From positions 107,880,001 through 107,944,000 of the forward strand of contig NC_042998.1 in the NCBI RefSeq assembly GCF_006345805.1: DNA of 64,000 nt, written 5' to 3'. The translations under genes and the position numbers were made by a program. The first letter of the stretch is position 1. Each line of letters begins with the position of its first letter. This DNA is from Octopus sinensis. Its lineage: Eukaryota. This document shows positions 29,885 through 52,030 of this stretch, one piece after another. The notes below the pieces were generated by a model, which was not told where the DNA came from, made no database searches, and worked only from the letters and a program-made list of their open reading frames with translations.

Positions 29885-30857
29885 CTGAAGAAATAAATAT
29901 GGTAAATAGTGAGAATGAATGTCATTAATTTACTGAGATCATATTACTAATAGTCTCATGATAAAACTTTAATCTTTAGTTAACTTTAATGTCTTAAAGG
30001 TTTTAAACAGTTTCACCTCAAGATTTATCCCACCCTACAATTTCTCTTTTTACTGTTTACCATGTAGTGAGAACCTGGCTGAAATTCAAGCTAAAATTCT
30101 CAGATTTCTCCTGTCTAAAATCATGATCTAATATATTTCCATAAAAGGTATTAATGCCTATATGAATATGATTTGACCAACTGACATTAGCTGAGGCACT
30201 AAGGCAGAACTGCATAGAAAGCATGCAAGATTTCCTGCAAAACAAATTCAAGACTCTCCTGAGTGAACAGTTATTTAAAAGTGAGTTATTTCAACTTAAA
30301 TTTGCACAAGTTGGTCGGTTTTCTTGTGTGGTAGTCTCTCATCTTGCTCATCTTCCTCTCCTATTCACAGGCTTTAAGTAGTAGTGTCAATCAAAGAATG
30401 CTCAGTATATGCTATGATTCATATGTCCTGTACTATTTACACAATATTTATTAAATGTATGTATGTAAATACAGTGCAGTGGTAAATAAAATATGTGGCA
30501 TTTCAAATAAATCTTAGTGTGGTTATTGTCAACACATGCAATCAAACAGCCTACCTGACATGAGAATAGCTAGAAAAAACGATAAGACTAACATCCACAC
30601 TAAAATCACTTCCCTCAATACACAAAAATCTGTACATTCCCAGTAGACTACTGCCAAGAACCAAAATATTAGGCATAAATTACATTGGAGGAGTTATTAA
30701 TATGAGCAACCACAAATGAAATACAATTAATCGATGAAATGATTTAATCTAAGAAGTCAATGAGTTTTGTTGTTAAGGGAAAATAATTTGTGTTGAAGGT
30801 GAACTAATAATAGAACTATAGATGTATTTAGACAGAAATAAAATATGTTTGGAGAAC

Positions 30858-32138
30858 TACAAGGGTTGGTTGAAAAGTTCATAGGCTGACCCAGATACTC
30901 TCATGGAATGTGACTAAGTGAGGTTTATTTTCCAACATAATCCCCCATGTGGTCCACATACTTCTTTTATTGGTGTTGTTGTGCTTAGATCCCATTGGTG
31001 AAGAAGCTTTCATCCTATTGGTCAAAAAATCATCAACAGCAGATATGACATCATCATCACTGCAATGCTGATTCTCAGCCAAGTGCTTTTTCATGTTGGG
31101 GGAACAGATGATAGTCAGATGGAGTAAAATCAAGAGGATAGGGAGAGTGATCAACCAATTTAAAGTCACAGTCAAGCATGGCAGTTATTGAAACCAAGGA
31201 TTTGTGTGCTTGAGCATTGTTCAGATGAAACAAGAACTCTTTTTGTCAGTTTTCCTGGGTGTTTAGTCTTGATAGCCTTTTGTAACTGCCTCAGCAAATT
31301 GGCATAGTACTCTCCATTGATGGTGTAGCCCTTTGAAGATAGTCAATAAACACAAAGCCTTCTGCATCCCAGAAAACTGATGCCATCACCTTCCCTGCAG
31401 ATGAAGTGATGACCTTCTTTGGAGCATGTGAGGAGGGGATCTTTCCACTGCATGGATAACCTTTTTGTCTCTGGTTCAAAGTGATCAACCCAACACTTAT
31501 CCTGGATTAAGAAACTCTACAGGAAACCACCTGAATATTCCACAAACAACACCAGATTTTCCCATGATGTTGTCAGCCTGGTGCACTTTTGATCAAGTGT
31601 CAGGAAACATGAACCCACATAACAGAAGCCTTCATCATTGTGCACAATATTCTCAACTCTCTCACAATATATGCTAATAACAATGACTATTAGTGTTGCC
31701 TGTCATCCATCACCATGTGGTGAACACAATCTTTGTTTTCTTCAGTGGTGGTAGTCACAGGACATCCAGATGTTGGGTCATCTTTAAGATTCTCCCTTCC
31801 CCTCCTAAACTCAGCAGCCTACTTTTGCACTGTTGATAAAGCTGGAACGTCATCCCCTTATGTAGCAAGAATGTCAGCATAAATGTCCTTGGGTACCTGC
31901 CGGTACTTGATAATATCATGATGTCAAATTTTGTCCATTCTCAAGAGAAGTTACTAGTAGTTACTTTTGAAGTCTTCTCTGAACTGTCAGATGTCAGTTT
32001 ACTTAGGGGGAAAAAAAAACAAACCCCCAAACAATGCAGTTATTGATAAGAAGTGTTGAAATTAATGCATGCAAAATTTCACAGCTATAGTATCACTCCT
32101 CCATAGTCAGCCTATGAACTTTTCAGCCCACCCTTGTA
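30858..32138 (-). mobile_element. Full-length (1281 bp) decayed mariner transposon
   Basis: 33-bp TIRs with 2 mismatches (30858-30890 and 32106-32138), TA ends. Frameshifted transposase pieces SAGKVMASVFWDAEG and PYPLDFTPSDYHLFPNMKKHL. Confidence 0.9.
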
Positions 32139-33099
32139 TAGGACACAAAGGACTCACCCTCTCTGTACAAAGTTGAAGTATTTTAGGGGTGTGTTGGAAG
32201 TGTATAATGTTGTATTACAGGGAAGTGGATGAAAAGGATTGGCTACCATTACACAAAAAAATTCGTTTATCTGTCAAGTAGGCTAATGATAATTTAAACA
32301 ATGAAAGTGTCTGTATTTTAAATAGAAATCTTGTGCTTGGTGACAAGAGAAATATTGCACAGGTGTTTTATTTCTCTCTCAGATGTATTAAAAGAATAAT
32401 AAAATGAACACTGAAGTCTATAGAGAAGGGGATTACTCAAGCTGTTACTAATCTAATACACTTTAGAGAGAAGACTGTTTGAAAATGAAATAATACATTT
32501 GTTTTTGTTACTGAGTGCCAAAGTCAATGTGAGTTACAAAGCAGATCAAGATCCATCAAAAAAACCTCAATGCAGTTACTTTATTTAACTGTTATTTTGC
32601 ACAGGCTGAGGACCAAATGGACTCATATATGTATGTAGTTGACTGAGAAATCATTGAAAGGTCTCATATTTGGTACATATGTATGGTAGCTTTAAGATTT
32701 TGCTGTTGTGTAATCCCAGCTCAATGTATCACAGGTCTGTTCTGATCAAGCAGACCTGATTATTGATAAATGACGAGGAACATTACACAGATCCAGAGTT
32801 CTGTCTAGTTTAGAACTATATTCCATGTGCAGCTGTGTAGTCATTAAGAAAAATAAGTAATGGGGTCAATTCATTTGACTAATTCAAGGTGGTGTGTGGT
32901 GTCCCAGCATGGCCACATACAGTCTAATGACTGAAACAAGTAAAAGATAAAAATTACATACCCACCCACACATATATATAATGTAATGTCTGGGGAGAGT
33001 CGTTCTGCTTTAATACCTTATTAATTAACACGCTCACTGGTTCAATTTCTACTCATTTACTTACTTATTTATTTTTTTCTAAAATATATATATATATAA

Positions 33100-33290
33100 A
33101 ATCATCATCATTTAATGTCTATTTTCCATGCTGGCATAGGCTCCAGTCTGATTTGGCATGGTTTCTATGGCTGGATGTCCTTCCTAATGCCAACCACTTT
33201 ACAGTGTGTGCTGGGTGCTTTTAACGTGGCACTGCATGAGTACTTCTATGTGGCACCAGCACAAGTGCTTTTTACATGACACTGGCAACG
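33100..33290 (-). mobile_element. RTE-type 3' tail remnant
   Basis: catcatcatttaatgtc...ggctggatgtccttcctaatgccaaccac. Confidence 0.7.
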
Positions 33291-33734
33291 GACTCTTGAA
33301 GGCTAGTCCGCTGCACCAGATGGAGTGGTTTTAACACTTCTGCTTAGAAGTTTCGAGTCTTCTTGAGTGCAGCAAGGCACCAGGTATCTTGGGCCTATAC
33401 ACACACACATACATATAAATGCAATACCAGTTCAAATATTTTTGAGAAATATTTGAACCCATAAAAGACTTTTCAATGTTGTTGGTAATGGAAAAAAAAA
33501 TTCTCTCTTGAAAAGGTGTAAAGATGCCAGAGTCACCCCCAGCTATTCAACAGCCATTGACTCTACTGAGTTTATCCATCCTTTGAAAAGTTTTGTTTTT
33601 TATCCTACAGGATGTCCAAAGAAAACCATCGACCTTACCAAACAGGCTTAGTAGGGTTGCTGGTTAAGTTGGCAACAGCCCAATCATGCAATAGGTTCTA
33701 CTTAGTTGTATATATATACATACATATAAAACAT

Positions 33735-34180
33735 CATCATCATTGTTTAGCATCCATTTTCCATGCTAGCATGGGTTGGACGGTTCAACTGGGGTCTGTG
33801 AAGCCAGAAGGCTTCATCAGGCCTAGTCAGATCTGGCAGTGTTTCTACGGCTGGATGCCCTTCCTAACGCCAACCACTCCATGAGTGTAGTGGGTGCTTT
33901 TTACGTGCCACCCGCACAGGTGCCAGACAGAGCTGGCAAACGGCCACGAACGGATGGTGCTTTTTATGTGCCACCGGCATGGGGGCCAGGCGAAGCTAGC
34001 AACGGACACGAACAGATGGTGCTTTTTACGTGCCACTGGCACGAGGCCAGTCGGGGTGGCGGGCGCTGGCAACGGTCACGAACGGATGGTTCTCTTACAT
34101 GCCACCGGCACTGGTAACACATCTGCAATTTCCATTGATCGATTTCGATTCTGATCCTCACTTGCCTCAACAGGTGTGTA
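33735..34180 (-). mobile_element. RTE 3' UTR with three structured modules plus tail
   Basis: Reverse complement of the 13969-14738 type. Confidence 0.85.
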
Positions 34181-34194
34181 TATATATATAGTGC

Positions 34195-35250
34195 GTTTAA
34201 ATATTTGTTGTGCAAGATTTTTTATGTGAAGTCGTGTGTTGAAACAGATATTGTTATATTTCGGAATGGTCATATTGCCAGTTTAGCCAATAAAAACACA
34301 CGCACTATATATTTGGTGTTATTTTGCTTCAGTGTTATTTATTTTTTTTACATTAATCTTAATCTTATTTCGGCCAGAGTTCTTTCGTCACACTCCTGTG
34401 ACCGCATCAGTGGTCCTTTGTTTTCTTCTTTCTTATTTGTGTCTCTCCTTACTAACTGTCGCCATTTTGTATTTCTATTGTATGTCTTCATTTGCACATG
34501 TTTATGTGCGTCTATGTTTATTTAGTGTGTGTATGGGGGGGATGCCTGTAATATTTGTATCTTCTGGAGGTGAACTGGCATACCGCTTTAGAAGGACCCT
34601 AGACAAACTTAAGCTAAGAATTAAGGTTGTTGAAAAGCCAGGCAACCCTATCAAATCTATAATTGGTAGAACTTATCCTTTAGAGCTCCACGACCTCCAT
34701 TTTTCAGGTCAATGTCTTTTTGTTCTACTAAAAGGATAGGTTCTACCAATTATAGGTTTGACAAATTACAGAAGCTACACACATAATAGAAAATAAACCT
34801 AGCCTGAATAGAAAACTAGAATGGAGCACTAACACACACCACAACATATGACGATAGAGGATCCCGAAAACATAATAAATACACAGATAAATAAACTAAT
34901 AGAAATAAATAACTATATATATTTTGCTGTTTTTGTTTATTCTTATTTTGTTCATGTGTTTACATCCACTTATTATTATCATTACATATACTTGTATGTA
35001 TGTATGTATAACAACTTATTTCGGCCAGAGTTCTTTTGTCACACTCCTGTGACCGCATCAGTGGTCCTTTGTTTTCTTCTTTCTTATTTGTGACTCTCCT
35101 TACTAACCGTCAGCCATTTTGTATTTCTATTGTATGTCTTCATTTGCACATGTTTATGTGCGTCTATGTTTATTTAGTGTATAAAATTGGATTCAATCCT
35201 AAATCTGATTTTTCCCTGTAAATTTGGATTTATTCCCTAATATTTATTAT
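34195..35250 (-). mobile_element. Rearranged Penelope-like element: two ~165-bp direct repeats (34364-34528 and 35015-35180, 4 differences), flanked by (TA)n
   Basis: Each repeat carries a hammerhead-like motif on the minus strand. The internal plus-strand peptide PVIFVSSGGELAYRFRRTLDKLKLRIKVVEKPGNPIKSIIGRTYP resembles the PLE RT-endonuclease linker (from memory). Confidence 0.65.
34370..34416 (-). ncRNA. Variant minimal type I hammerhead-like motif (second copy at about 35021-35067, with G12 mutated)
   Basis: GGACCA CUGAUG CG GUCACA-GGAG-UGUGAC GAA AG-AA-CU C UGGCC. Position 9 is non-canonical. Confidence 0.55.
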
Positions 35251-35399
35251 TATTATATATATATATATAGTAGTTGTCTACTCCTTATGCAGAGTTTGAC
35301 TACCTCCTGTACCTACACCTTAGAACCATCAAGGCACCTAATGTGTAGTTGGCATTAGGAAGGGCATCCAGTTGTTGAAACCATGCCAAAGCAGACACT

Positions 35400-35600
35400 G
35401 GAGCACAATGCAGTTCTTTGACACCCACATAGACTGCATATCTGATTTGGACCACCAAGAGCTGCAGATAAGTCCTGATTTTTGTGGATCTTAAAATGTC
35501 TTTTGAGGCCTCCGTTAGACTTGCAAACCTTCTTGCATACATTGCATTGAAAGGTGTGCACAGAGATATAGGCAGAGTAGTTGGAGGTTCCTTTTCCATG
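35400..35600 (-). other. Isolated C2H2 zinc-finger coding fragment
   Basis: FQCNVCKKVCKSNGGLKRHFKIH (C-x2-C-x12-H-x3-H), followed by a truncated CSLC. Confidence 0.6.
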
Positions 35601-35619
35601 GTTTTGCATATATATATGT

Positions 35620-35950
35620 ATCAGGCTGGGTAACCATGTCTCTCCTTTACAGTGACACACCTGTTTCTGTCCTCATTCTTGATTACTCTCTCTCTCTGGC
35701 TGGGTAACCATGTACCTCCTCTGCAGCAAGACACCCGTTTCTGTTTCTCTGTCACACTCTAACCTTTTATCATCTGACACAAGATCACCTCTTCCAGTAC
35801 CCCTCCCCTCTCAAAGGATCTTTGTCTTGCAAGTTACTTGGTGACCTTGCCAGTGCTGATGGCAGGTAAAAAGCATTCAGTCCACTCTGTGAAATGGTTG
35901 GCATTTGGAAAGCGTCCAGTTGTAAAAACCTTGTCAAAATTGAAGTCAGG
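35620..35950 (+). mobile_element. LINE 3' UTR subfamily fragment, shared with 54640-54910 (+) and about 51140-51300 (-)
   Basis: ctgggtaaccatgtacctcct.t.cagcaagacacc.gtttctgt...gcaagttacttggtga.c.tgccagtgctg. Confidence 0.65.
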
Positions 35951-36539
35951 TCACTCTTGAGCGCTACTGGTAACAGATAACCCAGTACAACCTGTCACAT
36001 GGTCGGGTCGTCAGCGACTAAACTGGCAACTCCATCAAGCTTGCTTGATGTGGAAGGTGATTGTTGGACACCCTGCAGGATGAAAAGTAAGACCCATCAA
36101 AGGGTGGAAGAACTACTGTGTAGCCAATGGCCAATTCAACAAGTACCTTGTTGTGGTGAAGTGCCTGTGTGCTCCATTGACCCGGAGAGCTATACTAGAG
36201 GGAGAGAAATATTCAGGCAGGTCTTACTAGGTCAGACAAGTCAAAGGGCAGGAGACAAACAAAATCTTAATGACAATAAATCAAAGTGTCGGCAGCAGGG
36301 CGTGGATTTAGTTATCGGCAGGACCTAACAGATCAGATTCCTGGCTTTGAACTAGTGGGATGTCATACAGAGGATCTTGAATAGAAGACAATGCATGAGA
36401 CCCTAATATTCCTAGTTAGATGGAAACTGCAGGACCACATGGAGCAACATGCTGTGACTCCTATAGTATGCACAACCGAAACGCCTATAAGGGGCGTCCT
36501 ATGGGATGACCTAGATGAGATGAAAACTGACTTTGTCTG

Positions 36540-36720
36540 TGCTTGTGCCACATAAAAAGCACTCAGTCCACTCTACTGGGTGGCAGAGCATCCAACCATG
36601 AAAACTCTGCCAAAACAGACTCAGAAGTCTGATGCAGGCTTCTGCCTGGCCAGCTCCTGTCAAACTGTCCAACCCATGTCAGCATGGAAGACGGACATTA
36701 AATGATGATGATAATGATGC
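36540..36720 (+). mobile_element. RTE-type 3' tail
   Basis: gccacataaaaagcac...ccaacccatgtcagcatgg...ggacattaaat(gat)n. Confidence 0.75.
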
Positions 36721-36873
36721 AGTTGGTAGTCTGGAATGTTGTACTCTTTCTACTGTTTAGTCTGGTTCAGTATACTTGGGCAGTCCTAGAGAAAGGGGAC
36801 AAATGTTTGTTGATATGCCATAAACTAAATGTGAGAATATCATCATCGTTATTTAACAGCCACACACATACAT

Positions 36874-36921
<48 letters not shown>

Positions 36922-37589
36922 TCTAATACTTGGCCACTAAGCATATTACTGGTACTATTTTCTTCCAGATGGAAGAAATTAGTTTGCAGTTCAGAAAATT
37001 TCAGTTTTTTTATTCATAAGCAACCAATTTGTGAGTGAATTATATGGTGTTAACCACTGAATACCACTCTACAGATTTTATACTTTTATCAATTTAAATA
37101 GTTGTGGATTTTATGATAGAGATATATGCTATATATATATATATATATATGTAAAAAATGAAGTTCGAAAATGCTGCTATAGTACACAAATTTTTAATTT
37201 TTATATATACATTATAACATGTTTCGGTTCTTGAGAACCTTATCAAAAAAAGTTATATATAAAAAAAGATAGTTCATGCTATCAAATATAAAAAATTCAT
37301 TTATAATATACAATAGAGTCAGACATCAAAAGTTCATATATCGTGAAGTGAGTTCGTTCATGCTATATGTTTAGAGAGTATGATGTAGAGATAAAGAACT
37401 GTATTTCATCAAAAAATTTAGACCAAGTTTAAACACCCTAGGCCAGGAATATTAAAACAAAAGATTGGTCCTCCGAAAAGGAGAAGCAAAATTCCACCAC
37501 GGCCGCTACCTTAAACAGTCACTCGCACTGACGGAAATATACCTTAGGGAAAAAAGGGAAAAAAATCTCTTCGAACAGATCTAACCCTG

Positions 37590-38142
37590 ATGGACTGGCC
37601 ACATACGATACAGCTAAGGGTCAGACCCGATTCTGATTGGTCAACACGTTGATGACGCCTCGTTCTGCTAGACTGGACAGGATACAAACAAGGGGCAGAT
37701 CTAATACAGCTATAGGCCGGGAATGGTCAGAATATTGATGACGTCCCGTTCTGCTTGACTGATCACCTGGCAGGGTGCAGACAGGGGGCAGATCTAATAC
37801 AGCTATAGGTCGGGATTGGTCAGAATATTGATGACATCCCGTTCTGCTTGACTAAGCCACCTAACAAAACGATTGGTCAAGGGGCAGATCTAATAAAGCT
37901 ATAGGTCGGGATTGGTCAGAATATTGATGACGTCCCGTTCTGCTTGACTAAGCCACCTAACGAAACGATTGGTCAAAACAGGATACAGACAAGGGGCAGA
38001 TCTAATACAGCTATAGGTCGGGATTGGTCGGAATATTGATGACGTCCCGTTCTGCTTGACTAAGCCACCTAAAGAAACGATTGGTCAAAACGTTGATGAC
38101 GTCACGTTACGCTGGACTGGCCACCTAACAGGTGATATAAAA
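37590..38142 (+). promoter_or_regulatory. Tandem promoter-like array: four 93-112-bp units plus a diverged precursor unit, ending in a TATA box
   Basis: Unit starts near 37692, 37785, 37881 and 37993. Seven GATTGGTC (reverse CCAAT) motifs lie in this span and an eighth at 37464. TGACGTC at 37739, 37928 and 38040; full TGACGTCA at 38097; TATAAAA at 38136. Confidence 0.65.
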
Positions 38143-38445
38143 CCCAAACAATTCACAAGGTTCGCCAGAACGATCCAGCGAACACCGACCAAAAGTCATC
38201 ACAGTTCCTCAAGGTAAAATCTAAAATGAATTCCTCGCTCTTTCAGGAACACCAATTTTTTATATTGACTGCATATCACCACTTTGATCTATTTTTTATA
38301 TTGAATGCATATCACCACTATGAACCACTACATCATACTCTCTAAACATATAGCATGAACGAACTCACTTCACGATATATGAACTTTTGATGTCTGACTC
38401 TATTGTATATTATAAATGAATTTTTTATATTTGATAGCATGAACT

Positions 38446-38518
38446 ATCTTTTTTTATATATAACTTTTTTTGATAAGGTTCTCAAGAACCGAAACATGTT
38501 ATAATGTATATATAAAAA
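38446..38518 (+). ncRNA. Minimal type I hammerhead ribozyme with U3-A8 core; an identical copy lies on the minus strand at 37198-37270
   Basis: UUGAUAA (38470-38476), GGUUC-UCAA-GAACC, GAAAC, palindromic AACAUGUU helix III; predicted GUU cleavage after 38500. Confidence 0.75.
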
Positions 38519-38600
38519 TTAAAAATTTGTGTACTATAGCAGCATTTTCGAACTTCATTTTTTACAAATATATACCCACTCGTATACGAGCTAATCTCAT

Positions 38601-38655
<55 letters not shown>

Positions 38656-40698
38656 ACAGTGGTAAATGAGTGATAAAGCAGAGACACATATATACATTGT
38701 TGCAGAGATGTGTATATACTGAGAATAAATCAGTTGTGACAAATTCTACATTCACAATGGTTCATGTTGAAAGTTAAAAAAAGCAGTTGTTCTATAAAGG
38801 TATTTCTGCTAAAAACAATGGAATTGAATTACATAGCAAAGTAATAAATTGGTAAGTGTAAAGTGGTTCAAGGGAATTTACATAGATACTAAAGTGGAAT
38901 AACAATGATTCCTTAAATTGGTATAAGTATTATATTTTCAAAGTGTTTACCTTGATTAATTAACAATTAAAGTCTGTTATCTAGTCTATCTGATGATAAG
39001 TACTGAACACAATAATGAACTAATTACACATTGACAGCATTAATAGAAGTGGGTTTTATCAGTTTAACTGATTGGCTGGGTGCTTAAAAAACAGACATTT
39101 AATGGTAGAGTAGTGTGTCAGCATAGTGGTTTTAATGCTGGTCATATTGGTAATGGTGAGGGAAATATTAACATAAACGATGATGATGATGAATTTCTTT
39201 TTGATAGGTTCTAATATGAAAACTACTTCCCTGTGGATATAGTTAAAAAAAAAAAACTGCAATAGTCACCTTCATTTCTATTACCACTATCACTCCTATT
39301 GTTATCATAACATGATCACTATCACTAGAAACAAGACTGCCAACACTCCAAAACCCTTCCCTCACAACCATCACCAAAAGCAACAAGAATTAGGTCAAGT
39401 GGACTAATTCTGAAACTTTGCAAGATACTTAGGTATGTATTTAACTCTGCAAGGAGTACAAACCGAAATAAGCAAAATTAGTTTTGTCCAGAAAGAAATG
39501 TCAAGATATTTTTCAGTTTCAAAGAATAAAATTACACTATTCTGGAAACTTGACAGGGTAACTTAGTAATAGTAAATTCAGTGATGAGGTTGAGAGGATA
39601 AATATCATAGGTTCAAATTTTGCTACAAGGTGGATAATTCGTCATTGGTTTTGATGACGAGCGTCCATTTGTGTGATCATCTGGATTCTTTCTCCATCCA
39701 TTCCGATAGTCTAACCAAGCATCACAAAAACTGGTTACTCCGACAGAAAGTCCATCACTGCTAGAGTGTTAGTCCTCCACTAACCTGTCACACATCTCAC
39801 TCTGCCATGTGTAGCAGCAAATGCGATGTCACTAAATTAATACTGCAGCCAGCAGACAAAATGGTGACAACTGCCTAACAACATCCTGTCTGACCATGTG
39901 GGCCTGAGAACAAAGATAGGATCAGATATCACTCCTGAACTGTGGTCTAACATCTAGAAGTCATCTTGAATTTATCTCATTTCCTCTGACTTGATCTCCA
40001 AATACCTGATAAGTTATGTTTGTTTTACAAGCCTACAAAACTGTAAATTGCATGGAGCCAAATCAGACTGTTATTAAATAATATATGTAACTCCTAACAA
40101 ATATGCCACTTTCTTTCATTTGTCCACTCATTTATATAATAGTGCATATACACTGTATATTTATTTGTGTGTGCATGTATATCTATATACATATCTTTCT
40201 TTCTCTGATTCTTCAGTCCCTGCTATAACATTAGCTCGTACAATAAACACCTCCGTCTATTTTTAGAAACTCGACCATTATATCTTATTCTTCCTTTTTG
40301 AGGTTTACTACTCACATTAGTAACCTCCCACTCCTGTACCATTTTCTGTACCCATCCCTCCACCTTAGTGCCTTTCAAAAATATCACCCCACCTCCTACA
40401 TATTCCTTCCCTACATTCTTCTCATTTTATCCCTCCCCTACTCCTCTCCTATCCTCCTCATAATATCTTGACCACCATCTAACACTCCTTTTTCATTTTC
40501 TATTCCTTTCTTCTTTTCTCACCTATTCCTTTTAACCACTCTCCTCATTTTAACATACATATCTATTCTATTCTCTCTATCTACCGAGTACTACTACTAC
40601 ATTCTCAAAATTTCATTCACACCACAAACCCTTTTGAATGAACAGTACATGGAATCTACATCTCCACACTTTCCATTTGTAATAACAAAATATGAAAA

Positions 40699-41000
40699 AC
40701 TAGCAGAGATACTCGGTGTTGCCCATGTCACATGCAATTGAAGAATTAGACTTTTCTGTTATATTTTCTGTAATGAACTGGAATACCTATGTTTAGAATT
40801 TCATCAAAATTGCAGATGAGGGTTATTTCCCTCTTTACACACCCTAAAAAAATTGTAATCGTGCCACATGTATCCCATACTACTGATTTTTATGCGCATA
40901 TTCCAAAATTCCAGTCTTATAGAACCTGTTAAAAGGACATTGACCTGAATAATGGAGGTCGTGGAGCTCTAAAATGTGAGAGTTAAGGCCCCTATTGGGG
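40699..41000 (+). mobile_element. Possible Helitron/Helentron-associated non-autonomous element
   Basis: Begins actagcagagatactcggtgttgccc, like HINE-type 5' ends I recall. The 3' end is not resolved. Confidence 0.4.
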
Positions 41001-43129
41001 GTGGATGTCTTAATGTCAATCAGAGAAATTGAATTGTTAAGAATCTGTTTAACTTGGGTCTTATATCTATTGTTTGAATTTCTTTAAAATAGGAAATATA
41101 TGTTCACTGGGTTTGTAAAAAGGAGCAAAGCTACAGGAAACCAAAAGATGAATGATCACAGTAAGCAGTCAGCTACCCTACCCTAGTCGTTACCACTCCC
41201 AATGTAGGATTCCTCACCATCCAGGTGACAGGCACAGCCGTAAGATGCATTATGAATCTATTGCAATTGGAAGGGCATGACCCAACTGAAATAAACATTA
41301 ACAACTGTGTGACTTGAGGGCTAAGGAGAAATGAAAGTGTCACCTCTGGAGTTTGCAAATGACCACTATACTGATACGTAACTGGACAGAATAAATTTAC
41401 AATCTATAAATGTCTTTGAATAACCAGTCACTCATCTGGGAAGGCCTTGAAATCAATGTTACCATCTGGGGACTATGTGTGACCCAGTGATAATAAAAAG
41501 ACTGAAAGGAGGTCTGCAATCAAATAACTTTACTCAACACTTTGCAACTGAATCAGTGGAGGCAAAGATGCCTCTCATTTACTTGACAATTTATGCACCA
41601 CATTGCAGAAATCACAATGTAAGTGTATGTCAAAGCAAACTCTTACACTGTTGTACCATTGAGTTACAAATAATGCTCATCTTTTATTTTTTTCCTTATT
41701 CAAATTTTTGACTGCTTAAAAATGAGTTTGGTATTTGTAGACAAACACTGGCAAAGAGAACTTCACTCATGATGTAGACTGCAAATGAAAAGGGAGATCA
41801 ACATTGATCCGTTCAGTGTTTGCATCTCTACATTCCTTAGCATACATTCTTTTGTGCTTGGCATGTGGCATACTGTACAGCAGTACAAATTACAAGATTA
41901 GGAGGAGAGAAAAGATGCACTGGGCTCTGCACAAATTTATTCCACTGACAAAAAGATTATTTGTATTGGTTTTTCAGTAACATGCCATTTCTTCTTTGCA
42001 AAAGTGGTTGTTTTTCTTGCAGTAGTTGTCATAATGAAAACTGCTGTTTCTATAACTTCCTCACTTAATGATGGTCCATGGTAGATTTAGCATATGCAGT
42101 AGTTGTTGTACTCCTCCAGTCATCTGTGTAGCTGCATCTCATCTTTTGTTACTGAGGGTTCATACATTGTTCTTGATGGAAGAGTCCATCATCATCATGT
42201 GTGTGAGTGTGTGTGTGTGTGTGTGTGATTTTAAATTGAAAACACAACTATATTCTAGTTTTAGCTCTTTTTTTATTGAAGATCTTCCATATTCCCTTAT
42301 AAGCTCTTAACAATTTGTTTGCAGCACTAAGGTTCTTTGAGCCAGTAATATTTTCAGACCTTCAAGTTCAAATTTTCTGGATGTAGAGATTGATTTTGGG
42401 GTGTTTTACAGCAATTCTACTATGAAACAAATCTATAGTATTGGACTTTATTAATGGTGACATTACCACATGTTAGAACTTTTGACTGTTGACTGAAGCA
42501 TGTCTAAATCAGGCAGTGATGACGTCATCAACAAAGTGATAATCATATTTTCATTTTGGGATATCAGTGCAGATAAGTAGATTTTTCACTGGAACTTAAG
42601 GGTGTTACTCATTAAATTTGATTTTTATTAATTTCTGGAACTGTCTTTCACAAGTCATAAGTACACATACACACAGATAATCAGTTGAGCTTATAGGTCA
42701 ATGATGTAATGTAAGTATTGTGTAAAAGAAAATGGGCTTTAAATTACAATACACATATATACGCAAACATACAATTTCTATACTATCATTCTCTCACATG
42801 ACTATTAATTATATCTGAATAGACTTATTTTACATATGTTTTAAATGAAATACTAGTGTGTTAGATAATGAGCATGGTGACCTAAATCATGGAAAAATAT
42901 GCCACACACATTATGAAACATAAAATATGCATCACATTAACCAACACAAAGGTTCTATCTTACCATCCTCACCACTGTTCAATGCAAGAGCCATCTCATT
43001 TAACAAATTGTATTCCAACTATCTAAGGCTTAGAATAACACTTTAGGATGGCGTCTGGAAGGTTAGTATAATTATCCAACTCAAACTGACACTGAAGCAA
43101 ATATGAAGAAAATGATAATTAAAAATAAG

Positions 43130-43720
43130 TTTAATCAGGTTGAAGGAGCTGCACTTATGTCCTTCACAGACCCTCCTAGACTGGTGCAATCAATGCACAG
43201 TTGAGATTCATCTTGAAAAATATAAGTTAACAACTGCGGGAAAAACTTAGGGAGGGAATTCCTGAAGATGCTTATAAAGGAAGAGATGAGAAACTGGTTA
43301 GCGTAGAGCTGAGGGAAAGTAGAAGACATAGTATGGGTGATGAGAATAGAGAAAAGTGGGCTTGAGTGTAAATATTATGTAGCTAACCAGCTGAGAAGCT
43401 ACTGAAACAGCAGTAGAAGAACCAGAGTAAGAGATCATGTTTTTCAAGTAGAGGTTGATGTGTATTGTTAAATGACTCCATCTAAATCAGCTGAGTAGCT
43501 TTGTTTTGGATGCAGTCAAGGATGTTTGTGTATATAAAAAGAAGCATGTCATTGTGGGTCATATTTGAGAGAACTAGCATCTGTTTGGGAGTGAAGTACT
43601 TCCTGTCCCTAAAAAGAAATGCTAGTCTTTGTGATGCAATCTTTGCTATGATGTGGATGTAGGATCACCAAAACATATCATCAGTGTTTATGAGGCCTAA
43701 CATCTCTAGCAAAGGTTTTA
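43130..43720 (-). mobile_element. Old CR1/Jockey-type LINE RT C-terminal remnant
   Basis: Translates in pieces as RLAFLFRDRKYFTPKQML and ILDCIQNKATQLI. Confidence 0.6.
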
Positions 43721-44199
43721 GCTGTAGACATGACTCTTGTTTAAGAATATCTTCAGTGTGTCTGGTCTTGAAGGCAGTGTAGAATGTGCTTCCTTTTCTT
43801 TTTTTAAGATGTGGGGTGGGTTGCTTAATGTGTTAGACATAATAACCAAATATCTCACTCCTGTCTTAAAGAAGAAAAGGTATTATGAAAAAAGTAGTCT
43901 CAGAAATAAATTGAGAATAAAACTAGATGGTCACACCTGAAATGTATTAAATTTCATGGCTGATTTGGGACAAGGCTGTACTCCTAGTTTCTTCTCTTCA
44001 ACTATCATAAATTGCTATAAGAACTAGTTATCAGCAGAAAAGAGTTTCCATGAGTAACCAGTCGTAAGCACCTCTGTTATAGTATTCTATTAATACTTGC
44101 TAAAACAACTATCAATTGAAATCTGTAATTAGTTTGACTGTGCTTACTTCATAGAAAATGTGTGGGCTTGTTTCAATGTGATGTGTGTGTGTGTACGAT

Positions 44200-44345
44200 C
44201 ATCATCATTTAATGTCTGCTTTTCTGCTTTCCATGTTTGCATGGGTTGGATAGTTTAACAGGGATTGGCTGGGAAGTGTCTGTTTTGGGATGGTTTTTAT
44301 GGCTGGATGCCCTTTCTAACACCAACCACCCCACAGAGTGGATTA
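44200..44345 (-). mobile_element. RTE-type 3' tail
   Basis: catcatcatttaatgtc...ggctggatgccctttctaacaccaaccac. Confidence 0.7.
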
Positions 44346-44519
44346 AAGAATTTGCATTCCTCCCCAGTGAGGAATCAGATCCTGGTCTCCTGCATAACAA
44401 GCAGGGATACTTACCACTATATTACCGAGGATACCTACACACACACACACACACATACATATATACTTTATTTAAAAGCAGCAGAAAATATAACATATAT
44501 ATATATATGTGTGTGTATA

Positions 44520-46587
44520 TCTGGTGAGATTGCTGAGATGCTTAAATGGAAATGTGTTGATTTGTGCTGCCTCCAAGAAGTAAGGTAGAGAGGAAGTTCT
44601 GCTAGGTTCCTCACAGGCAAAGAACACAGATACAAGATTTTCTGAGCAGGGAACACTGATGGAGTCGGTGGTGGGGGTATACTTTTTGCGGAGAAATGGG
44701 TTGATAAGGTAATCGAGGTAGTCAGAGGTAGACAGCTGCAAGAGAAATACTTAGCCAAAGATAAACCTCGCAACCTGGCTTTTGTTGACATGAAGAAAGC
44801 CTTTGACAGGGTCCCCCGATCCCATATCTGGTGGTCAATGAGGAAACTAGGGATAGATGAATGGTTAGTGAAAGCTGCGCAAACCATGTACAGGAACGCT
44901 GTCAGTAAGGTGAGGGTTGGCAATGAGTACAGTGAAGAATTGTGGGTAGAGGTAGGGGTCCACCAAGCTTCAGTCCTCAGCCCCTCCTATTTATCATAGT
45001 CCTCCAGGCAATAACTGAGGAATTCCAGACAGGATGTCCCTGGGAGCACCTCTATGCTGATGACCTTGCTCTAATTGCTGAGTCACTATCAGAACTGGAG
45101 GAGAAGTTTCAGGTGTGGAAGCAAGGATTAGAATCGAATGGCCTTAGAGTCAACCTAGCTAAAACCAAAGTCCTAATAATCTACCCTTCAAGTAGATGGC
45201 CCAACTCGATCTGTAGAAAAGGCATACGTAGAGACTCTATAAGATGTACCTAGTGTAAGCTATGGACACAAAAGAGGTGCAGCAATATCAAAGGAAAGCT
45301 AACTAGGAAGATAGTTTTTGTGTGGCAGATGCTCAGGAGCAATAAACACTAAAAATGTGCAAGCAACAACTTCTGCCACATTCTAGGGAGAAAAACTAGA
45401 AGCAGGTGATAGCTTTCGTTAACTAGGTGACCAAGTCAGTAGCCGGGATGGATGCTCTGAAAGTGCAGCTGCTAGAATGAGAATAGCCTGGGCAAAGTTC
45501 AGAGAGCTCTTACCTCTTCTGGTGACAAAGGGCCTCTTGCTCAGAGTAAAAGGTAGACTGTATGACACATGTGTATGAACATCCATGCTACATGGCAGTG
45601 AAACATGGGCTGTGACTGCTGAGGACATGCATAAGCTTGCAAGAAATGAAGCTAGTAAGCTCTACTGGATGTGTAATGTCAGTGTGCATATGCAACAGAA
45701 TATAAGCACTCTGAGAGAAAAGTTAGACATAAGAAGCATCAGATGTGGTGTGCAAGAGAGATGACGGTGCTGGTATAGTCATGTGACGTGAGTGGATGAG
45801 GATAGCTGTGTGAAAAAGTGTCACACCCTAGTGGTTGAGGGAAACTGTGGAAGAGGTAGACCCAGGAAGACCTGGGATGAGATGGTGAAGCATGACCTTT
45901 GAACATTGGTCCACACCAAGGCAATGACTAGTGACTGAGACCTTTGGAAATATACTGTGCTTGAGAAGACCCAGCAAGCCAAATGAGACCATAACCTGTG
46001 GCCTATGTCAGTAGTGTAACCAGCCCACTTAGGCATGCCTTTCTTTTACTGGACACTAAACTCTGCTTGCGAAGACCTGTTGAGGCAAGTGAAATCGAAA
46101 TCAAATTCGATGACAGCACTGCACGACTGGCATCCATGTTAGTGGAGTGCTAAGAGCACCATCCGAGCATACTCGTTGCCAGGGCCGCTGACTGGTCCCC
46201 GTGGCGGTGGCATGTAAAAAGCATCGTTCGACCGTGATCATTACCAGCATCGCCTTACTGGCACTTGTGCCGGTGGTACGTGAAAAACAACATTCAAGCA
46301 AGGGCGATGCCAGTGCCGCAGGACTAGCTCTTGTGCAGATGACACGTAAAAACACCATTTGAGCATGGCTGTTGCCAGTACCAACTGAGCGGCCTTTGTG
46401 CTGGTGGTAAGTAAAAGCACCCACTACACTCTCGGAGTGGTTGGTGTTAGGAAGGGCATCCAGCTGTAGAAACTCTGCCAGATCAGATTGGAGCCTGGTG
46501 CAGCCATCTGGCTCACCAGTCCCCAATCAAACCATCCAACCCATGCCAGCATGGAAAGTGGACGTTAAACAATGATGATGATGATGA
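44520..46587 (+). mobile_element. Internally deleted RTE LINE: APE fragment fused to RT, with 3' UTR modules and tail
   Basis: SGEIAEMLKWKCVDLCCLQEVR...WVDKVIEVVR jumps at about 44728 to QLQEKYLAKDKP, then KAFDRVP and LYADDLALIAES. Four modules at 46100-46420, then (GAT)n. Confidence 0.88.
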
Positions 46588-47059
46588 TATATATATATAT
46601 ATAATGGAAAATCAATAAAAAAGAGTATAGTGAACTTGTTGTGAAGAGTAGAAAATCCAATGTTTTAGACAGTCCTTGAGGGGTAAATCAAAAGACGCAG
46701 AATTAATGAAAGACAGTTGAGTTTCACATTCTCTAAGTTGAAAAAACTGGCCAAGGATCTAAAAATCTGCTATCTCTCATTAATTTCTCTTCTTTTAACT
46801 TTCCCATACTCTTTTTATCAGTTTTATTACATAATATAAATCTAGCCAACACAAACCAGCAACAGCTTCTTTGGGGTCTGTTTTAACGTACACAAACACA
46901 CACTTTTTATGCGTGCATGCATGTGTGTGTGTGCATACGTATGTACATACATACATATTGTTATATTTCAGGATGGTCCTATTTTTTTCTCAAATAAACA
47001 CATGCACTATATATTCATCCTTCACTTCAGCTTTATTTTTCAATACACCTACCCACAGA

Positions 47060-47670
47060 TATCATCATCATCATCATCATCATTTAACGTCCGTTTTCCT
47101 TGCATTTTCCATGGGCTGGACAGTTCGACCAGGGTCTGGGAAGCCAGGAGACTGCACCAGGCTCCAGTCTGATCTGGCAGTGTTTCTACAGCTGGATGCC
47201 CTTCCTAACTCCAACCACTCCGTGAGTGTGATGGGTGCTTTTTACGTGCCACCAGCACAGGGGCCAGAGGAGACTGGCAAAGGCCATGATTGGTTGGTGC
47301 ATTTTATGTGCCACTGGCACAGAAGCCAGTCAAGGCGGCACTGACATCAGCGATGTTCGGATGGTGCTTTTTACATGCCACCAGCACAGGTATTACAACT
47401 ACAATTTCCATTTGATTTTTATTTTGATGTTGATGTACTTGACTCAATAGGTCTCCTCAAGCACAGCAGGTCACCCTACAATCCAAGGTAAGCACAGCAG
47501 GTCGTCCTACGATCCAAGGTATTTTGAATGGGCTGGGGATGGTTATGTGAAGCTGGTGTAGGATATGCCGTGGACTCACTTTATTTGTTGGATCTTCGCA
47601 GTCACAGCATATCTCCAGAGGTCTCAGTCTTTCGTCATTGCCTCTGTGAAGCCCAACGTTTGAAGGTCAT
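47060..47670 (-). mobile_element. RTE 3' fragment (tail, modules, ORF end)
   Basis: Reverse complement of the common tail and of gggcttcacagaggcaatgac. Confidence 0.8.
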
Positions 47671-48169
47671 GATATATACATAACTACCAGAAGAATACCT
47701 GATTATTGTTTAGGAAACAAAAAATGCTATCAGTGGCCAATTTTTTGAATGAGACTATGATTCAGTACAAATTTATTATTTCCAAGACAATGTGTATATT
47801 ATTTCTAATAGATAAACATTTTTATTTGTTAATATATTATTCACAATTCAATAACTCACTGTAAAAGGAATGGTGCAATGTCATTCCTACCACAACAATC
47901 TGGTTAGGATAACATTAACGCATACAGAACATATATTTCAAATCTCACATCAGGAGAGAAGGAAGTGCTCATGACCATTTACAGGGCTTCTGAAACTGGT
48001 GGGAGAGAAGGGGAATGGAATCCTTGAACCAGAGACCTGATCTGAATGTTTGCAACAGAGTGAGCTCTACTAAATACAGTGTTATGTTTCTATGCCAAGC
48101 TTTCATGCTAGCAACCAGGATCTTAGACATAGAGATCTTCACTGATAGTCTTCCCTTGGACTCACAATT

Positions 48170-48560
48170 TCCAAGGCACAAATGAGGTTGTGTGGTAAGA
48201 ATCTTGCTTTCTAACCACGTGATTCTGAGTTCAGTTCCACGCATGGCAACTTGGACAAGTGTCTTCTATTCCAGCCTCAGACTGACCAAAACCTTATGAG
48301 TGGATTTGGTAGATGGAAACTCACACATATACATACATACATACATGTGTGTGTATGCCTTTGTGTCTATGTTTGTCTCTCACCATCACTTGACAACTGG
48401 TGTTTATGTTCCCATAATTTAGCAGTTCAGCAAAAGATATCGATAAAATAAGTATATGGGTTAAAAGAAAAATAAGTATTTGGGTTGATTCATTTGACTA
48501 AAAATTTTTTGATGTGGTTTTCCAGCATGGCTGCAGTCAACTGGCTGAAACAAGTAAAAG
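48170..48560 (+). mobile_element. SINE family A, diverged full length
   Basis: gaggttgtgtggtaag..gagttcagttcc..gagtggatttggtagatggaaact..ctgaaacaagtaaaag. Confidence 0.75.
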
Positions 48561-49433
48561 ATTATCTGCCATCCCACTTAATTATGAAGCAAAATCTAAA
48601 TTGATTTTGATCTCTCAATGCACACCCCAATTTCTTCCTGTAAATTTTGATGAAAACCTTCCTGAGGTATCTAAGTGATACCATAAATAACAGCTGATGT
48701 CATAAACTGTAACTACATGACTAACTGAACTTTAAACTGTTATCTGCTATGCTATTATTGTTTATTTTCACTTAGTAGTTGCCTAAACAAAAGCTGGATG
48801 TATAAACTTTTAGTAAGAGGTAAGGAGCAATCCCAGTTACCACATACCATAGAGAGAGGAAACAAAAATGTGGTCAATTGATGTGTCAGACATAATAGCC
48901 AAATCTACAACTTCTATCTTTAAAATAATAAAGGATACTTTGAAAAATGTAGATTTAGAAATACATTGAAAAAAGACTAGGTAACCACAGCTTGAACAAC
49001 ATAAAATGTAGATTTACTGAATCATGCTTGCCTGAAAATAAAATAGTTCCTGGCTGAAAATCATTGTTCTTCATTAAGATATTTTATACCACATACTTAT
49101 CAGACGTAACATAAGGTAAACCACATACTTAGACATAACATAAGGTAAACCACATACTTGTCAATATATATTCCATATTGTGTATCTTTTCAATATTCAA
49201 TATGCTTGAACCATATACCTTAACTATCTGTCTGTTCTGTCTCACTACCTAATGTGTGTGTGTGAGAGAGAGAGTTGAAGGCACAAGACATATTATAAAA
49301 ACCTGCCTAGACCCACACATCTCCAAAGCAAGAACCTATTAGTGGCTTGTATCTTTATACTGTGTATATTAAATGATATTTACCTCTCATTAGATGGAGT
49401 ACATTTTTTGTTGATCTTACCATAATGGAAGAG

Positions 49434-50778: not shown

Positions 50779-50789
50779 AACTATATATG

Positions 50790-51930: not shown

Positions 51931-52030
51931 CACATGTTCCCTCTACAGATAGAGATTAGCACTTCTTTGTCAAAACAAAACATTGTCTACCATATCCCTT
52001 ATTTAATACACAGCATTCAATAATACATAC

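What the first reader, a model, noticed from the sequence alone, without database searches (positions are those of the whole stretch)
37151..38605. Brand-new Penelope-like insertion forming a 238-bp perfect inverted repeat inside the host intron
Seen: the arms match at all 238 positions, the 939-bp spacer opens with a peptide end typical of PLE GIY-YIG endonucleases (KELYFIKKFRPSLN*), the right arm continues about 40 bp further to (TA)n, and the left arm abuts (TA)n. Known: PLEs often insert as 5'-truncated copies with an inverted pseudo-LTR. Inferred: this is an active or very recently active family that targets (TA)n, and the host pre-mRNA gains a long perfect dsRNA stem, a strong ADAR substrate in an editing-rich lineage.
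Basis: partly seen in the sequence, partly recalled or inferred. Interest (0 to 1): 0.8.

Follow-up and report, generated by a model that had tools for sequence, protein, structure and literature searches.

The report
Young inverted retroelement insertion in intron
A very young 1.45-kb mobile-element insertion, most likely a truncated head-to-head Penelope-like retroelement, sits in a (TA)n microsatellite inside an intron of a cephalopod CCDC171-like gene and forms a perfect 239-bp hairpin; it is an ordinary kind of event, and its family could not be proven here.

Summary
The geometry is real. The arms 37150-37388 and 38328-38566 are a perfect 239-nt inverted repeat around a 939-nt spacer. The left arm abuts (TA)10. 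The right arm is followed by a 34-38-nt unique tail and then (TA)26. The peptide exists, but the frame runs on to ...SLNTLGQEY before the stop, not to a stop right after LN.

The insertion lies in a 22.1-kb GT-AG intron of a CCDC171-like gene on the minus strand. The closest protein is from Argonauta hians, so the host is probably a cephalopod; the species was not identified.

The anatomy fits what is published for Penelope-like elements (PLEs):
- an inverted 5'-truncated copy,
- a one-sided 30-40-bp tail,
- a (TA)n target,
- an ORF end followed by a promoter-like region.

The sequence evidence for a GIY-YIG endonuclease is weak. Only 21 codons remain, profile searches gave no signal, and a motif matrix ranked the peptide 28th of 127,882 positions. 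No hammerhead ribozyme and no second copy were found anywhere reachable.

A serious rival is an integrase-type TIR transposon (Ginger2-like): the termini read TGTAA...TTACA and the target is TA-rich, but the 4-bp target duplication is imperfect.

"Brand-new" can only be bounded to under about 1.7 My. ADAR editing is untested inference.

The parts
37130..37149 (.). Left flank: (TA)10 microsatellite directly abutting the left arm. Presumed half of the target tract.
   Evidence: Read directly. The mismatch at 37149 marks the end of the inverted repeat.
37150..37388 (-). Left arm: exact reverse complement of 38328-38566. Read as a short, 239-nt 5'-truncated inverted copy of the element's 3' region, without the tail. 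25% G+C. Its outer end reads TGTAA.
   Evidence: 239/239 complementarity. G+C content.
37390..37455 (+). ORF remnant of 21 codons, DKELYFIKKFRPSLNTLGQEY, plus the TAA stop at 37453-37455. It begins at the arm/spacer junction. Possibly the C-terminal end of a GIY-YIG endonuclease (E, I and PSLN positions).
   Evidence: Translation. It aligns to the E/I/N columns of PLE endonuclease C-termini. Motif matrix rank 28 of 127,882. No HMMER, Pfam or BLAST support.
37389..38327 (+). Spacer: the unique body of the longer 5'-truncated copy, consisting of the ORF end plus an untranslated, pLTR-like region. 44% G+C.
37635..38135 (+). Six tandem units (86-112 nt apart, the last two 57 nt). Each carries GATTGGTC (an inverted CCAAT box) and TGACG[TC]C (CRE-like). 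Enhancer-like array.
   Evidence: TGACGTC occurs 7 times in the window against 1.4 expected, and 5 of the 7 lie here.
38136..38142 (+). TATAAAA immediately after the last repeat unit. Putative TATA box of a promoter pointing rightwards into the right arm.
   Evidence: Promoter function is inferred, not shown.
38255..38323 (+). 36-nt tandem duplication (1.9 copies) just inside the right arm and not part of the inverted repeat.
38328..38566 (+). Right arm: the 3'-terminal 239 nt of the longer copy, contiguous with the spacer. Its outer end reads TTACA.
38567..38604 (+). One-sided tail of 34-38 nt with no counterpart at the left arm. It contains the 12-nt palindrome CTCGTATACGAG (38579-38590) preceded by ACCCAC.
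   Evidence: The length matches the 30-40-bp PLE tail of PMC8557442 and PMC11167929. Under the TIR rival this stretch is host DNA.
38601..38652 (.). Right flank: (TA)26 microsatellite. Presumed other half of the target tract.
   Evidence: TRF: period 2, 26 copies, 96% matches.
29885..52030 (-). Host intron (22,146 nt, GT...AG) of a CCDC171-like gene. It lies between the exon at 52085-52031 and the exon whose first base is 29884 (aligned down to about 29762).
   Evidence: phmmer hit to the Argonauta hians CCDC171-like protein. tblastn exon map at 59-76% identity. Splice sites read directly.

Best explanation
This is a single, recent insertion of a Penelope-like retroelement (PLE) into a (TA)n microsatellite, made of two 5'-truncated copies joined head to head.

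Proposed mechanism (inferred):
1. The element's endonuclease cut both strands of the TA tract.
2. Each free 3' end primed reverse transcription of element RNA at one of two adjacent internal start sites.
3. The copy primed at the distal site (right, plus strand, about 1,216 nt) kept the 34-38-nt tail. It ran back through a promoter-bearing pLTR-like region and stopped 21 codons before the end of the RT-EN ORF.
4. The copy primed at the proximal site (left, inverted) has no tail and stopped after 239 nt.
5. Host repair joined the two 5' ends.

The result is a perfect 239-bp inverted repeat around a 939-nt loop, in a 22-kb intron of a CCDC171-like gene, with the longer copy antisense to the host gene.

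Shown: the geometry, the flanks, the intron context and the predicted RNA hairpin. Inferred: PLE identity, dual-strand priming, promoter activity and any ADAR or Dicer processing of the hairpin.
For: 1. Head-to-head arrangement with the 3' ends pointing outwards, arms 239/239 identical. PMC8557442 describes exactly this: an inverted 5'-truncated copy that forms inverted repeats.
2. A 34-38-nt extension at one end only. The same paper describes a 30-40-bp tail often present at only one end. PMC11167929 shows that the tail equals the stretch between two adjacent internal RT start sites, and that the PLE protein nicks and extends both DNA strands.
3. (TA)n on both sides. (TA)n bias is reported for Naiad PLEs, and microsatellite bias was earlier hypothesised for Neptune.
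4. The order is ORF end, then a repeat array with CCAAT/CRE-like motifs, then TATAAAA, then the unit's end. This is the order expected for ORF followed by pLTR. An internal promoter pointing out through a TIR would be odd for a cut-and-paste element.
5. The 21-codon remnant aligns with the invariant E, I and N of PLE endonuclease C-termini. It shares PSLN with retrieved PLE ENs (KEAIHIRLNHPSLNRDGG). Its motif-matrix rank is 28 of 127,882, roughly p = 0.01-0.05 once restricted to positions next to the inner junctions.
6. PLEs exist in this genome. A second remnant at 34364-35180 has the top-scoring EN C-terminal motif in the window (27 bits against 12 for the next), a partial-tandem (pLTR-like) 165-nt direct repeat, and a (TA)n tract about 70 nt beyond its right end.
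7. Recently active PLE families are reported in Octopus vulgaris: 31 families and 336 near-full-length insertions (PMC13282606).
Against: - No RT and no recognisable GIY-YIG core are present.
- The peptide gives no signal with Pfam, with HMMER profiles built from 120-240 PLE endonucleases (rank about 1,150-1,200 of about 2,100 hits), or with blastp-short.
- No hammerhead ribozyme was found even at E <= 10 or by a core-motif scan, although canonical C-terminal-EN PLEs usually carry one.
- No other copy exists in the window, and none was found in the metagenome, prokaryote-genome or viral collections.
- No protein sharing words with the peptide was retrieved.
- The outer termini read TGTAA...TTACA, the TGTNR signature of integrase-type elements. 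This is about a 1-in-128 coincidence under the PLE reading.
Confidence: 0.55

Rival explanations
1. A non-autonomous cut-and-paste DNA transposon with 239-bp terminal inverted repeats, of the integrase-related kind (Ginger2-like), inserted at a TATA site. On this reading the 34-38-nt 'tail' and the right (TA)26 are simply host sequence, and the peptide is a coincidence.
For: - The termini TGTAA...TTACA fit the conserved TGTNR pattern.
- Ginger2 prefers the AT-rich target RTATAY, has 50-180-bp TIRs (Ginger1 up to 270 bp) and occurs in molluscs (PMC2836005).
- The flanks are A-TATA | element | AATA-T, so 3 of 4 TSD positions match and the R and Y context fits.
- Recently active TIR insertions outnumber near-full-length PLE insertions about 10 to 1 in Octopus vulgaris, including 871 unclassified TIR copies.
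- The peptide is not statistically significant.
Against: - The 4-bp TSD is not perfect (TATA versus AATA) in an element whose 478 arm bases carry no change. No TSD length from 2 to 11 bp is perfect with these termini (sequence).
- Ginger is not listed among O. vulgaris TE groups.
- The arm is longer than the reported Ginger2 range.
- A promoter-like array with a TATA box pointing outwards through a TIR, downstream of an ORF end, is not the layout of a TIR element.
- A (TA)26 tract exactly 34-38 nt beyond the end would have to be coincidence.
- The motif match was found after comparing with many superfamilies.
Confidence: 0.25
2. Not a primary insertion product. It is either an assembly artefact (a repeat graph mis-resolved at a complex element flanked by microsatellites) or a later local inverted duplication of 239 bp by replication template switching next to an older insertion.
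For: - PMC8557442 warns that complex PLE tandem/inverted structures often cause problems in shotgun assemblies.
- Perfect identity of the arms is also what a computational duplication would give.
- Both ends lie in low-complexity TA runs.
Against: - The whole structure is only 1.45 kb, has sharp boundaries and contains no Ns.
- The asymmetry (a tail on one side only) is a specific biological signature, not a typical assembler error.
- The arms end exactly at the TA tract on the left.
Confidence: 0.1
3. The spacer's ORF end derives from the host CCDC171-like gene itself (a captured or retro-copied 3' end) rather than from a transposon ORF.
For: The hexapeptide IKKFRP in the remnant is identical to the last six residues of the Argonauta hians CCDC171-like protein (...KRKSLIKKFRP). 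Only about 7 independent non-exon 6-mer matches occur in about 90,000 six-frame 6-mers of the window, so p is about 1e-3 for this peptide.
Against: - Similarity does not extend beyond the 6-mer.
- The remnant is on the opposite strand to the gene.
- It lies between exons for residues about 1098 and 1099, which is out of order.
- The frame continues 9 codons past FRP, whereas the Argonauta model stops there.
- This was a post-hoc observation.
- The Argonauta terminal exon could not be inspected because the gene range was too long.
Confidence: 0.03

Closest known systems
Endonuclease-positive Penelope-like elements with (TA)n/microsatellite bias ((TA)n for Naiad; bias hypothesised for Neptune; PMC8557442), and Poseidon_Ac, whose mechanism was studied in vitro (PMC11167929)
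   Same: 5' truncation. An inverted truncated copy forming flanking inverted repeats. A 30-40-bp tail at one end. AT-rich/(TA)n target. An ORF ending in an E...I...LN-type motif followed by an untranslated region that carries regulatory sequence. Naiads also lack a hammerhead ribozyme.
   Different: Only 21 codons of ORF are present, so the RT and the GIY-YIG core are unverified. There is no hammerhead ribozyme, although a C-terminal EN position would place it with clades that normally have one. There is no direct (tandem) pLTR, only the inverted form. The peptide scores poorly against Poseidon-type EN profiles.
Ginger2/Tdd DNA transposons (PMC2836005)
   Same: TGTNR...YNACA termini, long TIRs, preference for TA-rich RTATAY targets, presence in molluscs.
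   Different: The 4-bp TSD is not intact (TATA/AATA). The arm is longer than 50-180 bp. No transposase is present. The internal promoter-like array points outwards. The one-sided 34-38-nt stretch before a second TA tract is left unexplained.
LINE-1 5' inversions by twin priming
   Same: Both DNA ends at the target prime reverse transcription, giving a head-to-head inverted/direct structure with 5' truncation.
   Different: Twin priming inverts a different, more 5' segment of the RNA without duplicating the 3' end. Here the inverted part duplicates the 3'-terminal 239 nt of the direct part. There is no poly(A).
Intronic inverted repeat pairs (for example inverted Alu pairs) as ADAR substrates; dsRNA-correlated editing across Metazoa (PMC5625713)
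   Same: An intronic inverted repeat predicted to form long intramolecular dsRNA in the pre-mRNA.
   Different: Here a single insertion supplies both arms, and they are perfectly complementary (239 bp, 75% A+U). Typical substrates are two diverged copies. No editing data were available.

Membership tests
Penelope-like elements (EN+) | PLE-type reverse transcriptase in the element's ORF | not testable with these tools
   This copy is truncated 21 codons before the stop. No longer copy could be retrieved: none in the window, and no matches in the public DNA collections.
Penelope-like elements (EN+) | GIY-YIG endonuclease domain | tested here: inconclusive
   Only the putative last helix is present. 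It aligns on the invariant E, I and N, and its motif-matrix rank is 28 of 127,882. Pfam gave no hit, HMMER profiles of 120-240 PLE ENs scored -2 to -3 bits, and blastp-short gave nothing. The protein search tools refuse queries this short.
Penelope-like elements (EN+) | Pseudo-LTR architecture: partial tandem and/or an adjacent inverted 5'-truncated copy | tested here: met
   The inverted form is present: 239-nt arms with 3' ends outwards and abrupt inner junctions, as defined in PMC8557442. No direct tandem is present.
Penelope-like elements (EN+) | [quoted passage not shown] | tested here: met
   34-38 nt (38567 to about 38600-38604) at the right end only; criterion. Caveat: under the TIR rival this stretch is host DNA.
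Penelope-like elements (EN+) | Hammerhead ribozyme in the pLTR (canonical C-terminal-EN clades) | tested here: not met
   No Rfam hammerhead family at E <= 10 in 36800-38900. No CUGANGA...GAAA core on either strand. Naiad and Chlamys PLEs also lack it, so this does not exclude PLEs as a whole.
Penelope-like elements (EN+) | AT-rich / microsatellite target | tested here: met
   (TA)10 on the left and (TA)26 on the right. Bias reported.
Ginger2 DNA transposons | TGTNR termini | tested here: met
   5'-TGTAA...TTACA-3' at 37150 and 38566; criterion from PMC2836005.
Ginger2 DNA transposons | 4-bp target-site duplication within RTATAY | tested here: not met
   The left flank is TATA and the right flank is AATA, 3 of 4, although the R and Y context is compatible.
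Ginger2 DNA transposons | TIRs of about 50-180 bp and a DDE integrase-like transposase in autonomous copies | tested here: inconclusive
   The arms are 239 bp, outside the Ginger2 range but inside Ginger1's 40-270 bp. No transposase ORF is present in the element; this is expected if it is non-autonomous.
ADAR substrates (long intramolecular dsRNA) | A long duplex in a transcribed RNA, with clustered A-to-G changes in RNA-seq | not testable with these tools
   The duplex is predicted: the arms pair fully and the MFE is -653 kcal/mol for the host-sense strand. The intronic position is shown. No expression or editing data are available here.

The most novel reading that the evidence does not exclude
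A currently or very recently active, hammerhead-less PLE lineage with a C-terminal endonuclease in a coleoid cephalopod that targets (TA)n. This single insertion would be a natural product of the dual-strand priming and two-RT-start-site mechanism so far seen only in vitro for an Anolis PLE. It would also deliver both an outward-facing promoter (antisense to the host gene) and a perfect 239-bp dsRNA-forming repeat into a CCDC171-like intron.
Probability: 0.3. Interest if true: 0.45.

Novelty: new member of a known kind. Interest (0 to 1): 0.3.

Why it matters
If the PLE reading holds, this is a clean in-genome example of the unusual PLE insertion chemistry: both strands primed, two alternative RT start sites, and a one-sided tail. 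It would also point to a family that was mobile within roughly the last 1-2 My in a cephalopod. For the host it is a neutral-looking intronic insertion. It adds a perfect A/U-rich 239-bp hairpin and possibly an antisense promoter, which makes a convenient natural test case for ADAR or Dicer action on new dsRNA. None of this is unexpected for specialists, since inverted PLE insertions and intronic inverted repeats are well known.

Tried and rejected
1. Direct search with the peptide. The search for homologous proteins refuses queries under 40 aa. The search of protein representatives refuses translations containing stops. I did not pad the query or work around these limits.
2. I seeded searches with the published Poseidon_Ac EN and with alignments that included the peptide. 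These retrieved 241 proteins, all or nearly all PLE endonuclease fragments, but none shares a 5-residue word with the peptide.
3. Exact look-up of 10 small ORFs from the element and of the neighbouring 608-aa LINE ORF. None is in the collection, so the source genome could not be reached.
4. DNA pattern scans of the metagenome, prokaryote-genome and viral collections, using a degenerate back-translation of the peptide and a 25-mer from the repeat unit. All gave zero matches.
5. Hammerhead and other ribozymes: nothing.
6. A DIRS-like internal complementary region for the tail: none. The one 11-mer match, at 40230, is at chance level.
7. LTR reading: a polypurine run at 37547-37565 is not followed by TG, so there is no credible 3'-LTR start (sequence).
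8. Weak tblastn similarity of 38283-38336 to PLE EN segments (E about 0.1 per query across 241 queries) was judged to be noise.
9. Tc1/IR-DR, hAT, piggyBac and other TIR termini or TSDs do not fit the ends. No perfect TSD of 2-11 bp exists with these termini.

Full report
**The observation**

The window is 37% G+C with no Ns. A direct check shows that 37150-37388 and 38328-38566 are exact reverse complements over 239 nt. The first mismatch going outwards is at 37149, and the extra 8 nt that the repeat finder added are chance matches in TA runs. The spacer is 939 nt.

The left arm touches (TA)10 at 37130-37149. The right arm is followed by 34-38 nt of unique sequence (AATATATACCCACTCGTATACGAGCTAATCTCAT...), and then by (TA)26 at 38601-38652. 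This is by far the longest inverted repeat in the 64 kb and the only perfect one.

However, the frame does not stop after LN. It reads (R)DKELYFIKKFRPSLNTLGQEY and stops at 37453-37455. The R codon straddles the arm/spacer junction.

**Where it sits**

A 92-aa ORF at 63.6-63.9 kb on the minus strand matches residues 907-967 of a 1,234-aa protein (E = 2e-10). NCBI names that protein coiled-coil domain-containing protein 171-like, from Argonauta hians.

tblastn of that protein against the window maps six collinear minus-strand exons at 59-76% identity:
- 63864-63682
- 62179-61985
- 60427-60281
- about 52085-52031
- about 29884-29762
- 29148-29011

The two exons that flank the element have canonical sites...TTTTAG|AGAC...GATAAG|GTATGT and ...TTCTTCAG|GTGAAA. 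The element therefore lies in a 22,146-nt intron (52030 to 29885). It is about 13.4 kb from the upstream exon and 7.3 kb from the downstream one, and its longer copy is antisense to the host gene. The host is most likely a cephalopod, but the species was not identified.

**Internal anatomy**

The arms are 25% G+C and the spacer is 44%. After the stop codon the spacer carries six tandem units at 37635-38135. Together with the sequence just before them, they hold eight GATTGGTC motifs (inverted CCAAT) and five TGACG[TC]C motifs (CRE-like). TGACGTC occurs 7 times in the window against 1.4 expected, and 5 of the 7 lie here. TATAAAA follows directly after the last unit, at 38136. This looks like an enhancer array plus TATA box pointing rightwards into the right arm; that function is inferred. 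A 36-nt duplication lies just inside the right arm.

No Rfam family, and no hammerhead in particular, matches the region even at E <= 10. No CUGANGA...GAAA core exists on either strand.

**Is it a Penelope-like element?**

The published signature of PLE insertions has four parts: strong 5' truncation, frequent adjacent inverted 5'-truncated copies that create inverted repeats, a 30-40-bp tail often present at only one end, and (TA)n bias in Naiads (microsatellite bias was earlier hypothesised for Neptune) (PMC8557442).

In vitro, the Anolis Poseidon protein cuts and extends both DNA strands. It starts reverse transcription at two adjacent internal sites, and the spacing between those sites equals the tail (PMC11167929).

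The structure here fits point by point:
- two copies with their 3' ends outwards,
- one copy with a 34-38-nt tail and one without,
- both ending in a TA tract,
- an ORF end followed by a regulatory-looking untranslated region.

I therefore favour a single insertion event in which both strands of the cut (TA)n primed cDNA synthesis. One cDNA started at the distal site and reached about 1,216 nt. The other started at the proximal site and reached 239 nt. Their 5' ends were then joined by repair.

**How strong is the sequence evidence?**

It is weak. The search tools refuse the 22-aa peptide, and I did not work around that. Instead I took the Poseidon_Ac protein from the supplement of PMC11167929 and collected 240 PLE endonuclease sequences.

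- The peptide aligns on the invariant E, I and N of their last motif.
- It shares PSLN with sequences such as KEAIHIRLNHPSLNRDGG.
- HMMER profiles built from these sets score it at -2 to -3 bits, ranking about 1,150-1,200 among about 2,100 six-frame pieces.
- Pfam and blastp-short give nothing.
- An ungapped motif matrix ranks it 28th of 127,882 six-frame positions. That is roughly p = 0.01-0.05 once restricted to positions beside the inner junctions in the right orientation.

The same matrix found a clear positive control. TEATHIIENKPSLNRKLEWS at 34768 scores 27 bits, against 12 for the runner-up. It lies inside a 651-nt unit with a 165-nt direct repeat at about 98% identity (34364-34528 / 35015-35180), and a (TA)n tract lies about 70 nt beyond its right end. 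This is an older partial-tandem PLE remnant, so PLEs do occur in this genome next to TA tracts.

A third search, seeded with the peptide's own words, returned a single unrelated candidate. Exact look-ups of element ORFs found nothing. Pattern scans of the metagenome, prokaryote and viral collections found nothing either. The window holds no second copy.

**The main rival**

The outer termini read TGTAA...TTACA. Ginger DNA transposons and Gypsy LTRs share TGTNR termini. Ginger2 elements have 50-180-bp TIRs, make 4-bp duplications, prefer RTATAY and occur in molluscs (PMC2836005). Here the flanks are A-TATA and AATA-T, so 3 of 4 positions match.

Several points count against this reading:
- The duplication is imperfect in an element whose 478 arm bases are unchanged.
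- No duplication length from 2 to 11 bp is perfect with these termini.
- The arm is longer than the Ginger2 range.
- The ORF-end/promoter order and the outward direction are wrong for a TIR element.
- A second TA tract exactly 34-38 nt away would have to be coincidence.

However, TA runs make target-duplication arguments soft. Recently active TIR copies are also about ten times as numerous as near-full-length PLE copies in Octopus vulgaris.

My estimates are about 0.55 for PLE, 0.25 for an integrase-type TIR element, 0.1 for an artefact or secondary rearrangement, and a few percent for a host-derived origin.

**Age**

The octopus calibration quoted in PMC13282606 equates a JC distance of 0.09 with 25 My. 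With that rate, zero differences in 2 x 239 nt give a median of about 0.4 My and a 95% upper bound of about 1.7 My, barring gene conversion between the arms. "Brand-new" is therefore compatible with the data but not demonstrated, and current activity is not shown.

**Consequences**

The host-sense RNA of 37130-38600 folds with the two arms fully paired, with an MFE of -653 kcal/mol. Long intramolecular dsRNA from repeats correlates with A-to-I editing across animals (abstract of PMC5625713, as listed). Editing or dicing of this A/U-rich stem is therefore a reasonable expectation, but it is untested here. If the promoter-like array works, it would drive transcription antisense to the host gene.

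**An unexplained detail**

IKKFRP in the remnant equals the last six residues of the Argonauta CCDC171-like protein. About seven other chance 6-mer matches occur across the window, so p is about 1e-3 for this peptide. The similarity does not extend further, and both the strand and the exon order are wrong for a host exon. I treat it as a probable coincidence. The Argonauta locus could not be read because its gene range was too long.

**Verdict**

This is a real, young, structurally tidy insertion of a known general kind. It is most likely a Penelope-like element, but family membership is unproven. Interest is modest.

Noticed in passing
window 34364-35270 (+): An older Penelope-like remnant. 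It is a 651-nt unit present as about 1.25 tandem copies, with a 165-nt direct repeat at 34364-34528 / 35015-35180 (about 98% identical). It contains the best GIY-YIG C-terminal motif in the window (TEATHIIENKPSLNRKLEWSTNTHHNI*, 34768-34848). A (TA)n tract lies at about 35252-35270, about 70 nt beyond the second repeat copy.
   Followed up: partly
window 63864-29011 (-): The 3' part of a CCDC171-like gene: six exons matching residues 906-1182 of the Argonauta hians protein GAB1604752.1 at 59-76% identity. The last roughly 50 residues were not found in the window.
   Followed up: yes
window 37408-37425 (+) versus the C-terminus of P0242: The hexapeptide IKKFRP of the ORF remnant is identical to the final six residues of the Argonauta CCDC171-like protein (...KRKSLIKKFRP). 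This is about p = 1e-3 by the window's own background and remains unexplained. It is probably chance, or a TE-derived terminal exon in that gene model.
   Followed up: partly
window 9445-13133 (-): A nearly intact non-LTR retrotransposon in three adjacent ORFs of 608, 262 and 290 aa. The 262-aa ORF has RVT_1 (E = 6e-15) and the 290-aa ORF has a weak zf-RVT match. The 608-aa ORF is not in the protein collection by exact look-up.
   Followed up: partly
window 1563-2719 (+) and 44942-45253 (+): Further reverse-transcriptase fragments. The first has RVT_1 at E = 1e-11. They share the peptide PLLFIIVLQAIT, so they are probably copies of one LINE family.
   Followed up: no
window 44360-44431 (-), with related ORF-like stretches at about 2.6-3.4, 7.8-8.2, 13.9-14.7, 25.0-25.4, 33.8-34.1, 46.1-46.5, 47.2-47.3 and 51.1 kb: A tRNA-like Rfam hit (31.8 bits) lies in or beside one copy of a highly repeated SINE-like family. 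The family is recognisable by pseudo-peptides such as FLQLDALPNANHS and GWMPFLTPTTP. Several copies form the 73-86% inverted pairs seen.
   Followed up: no
window 20941-21336 (-): A 131-aa ORF with a mariner-like transposase C-terminus (...HDDNTPHH...PYSPDLAPSDFHLFP...). Probably a Tc1/mariner remnant.
   Followed up: no
window 38579-38590 (+): A perfect 12-nt palindrome, CTCGTATACGAG, preceded by ACCCAC, inside the one-sided tail. It is reminiscent of the AC-rich stem-loop where the Anolis PLE starts reverse transcription, and it also contains a GTATAC (RTATAY) site.
   Followed up: no
window 35355-35660 (-): A 101-aa ORF with one weak C2H2 zinc-finger match (E = 2.5e-4, below the Pfam cut-off), just downstream of the older PLE remnant.
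   Followed up: no
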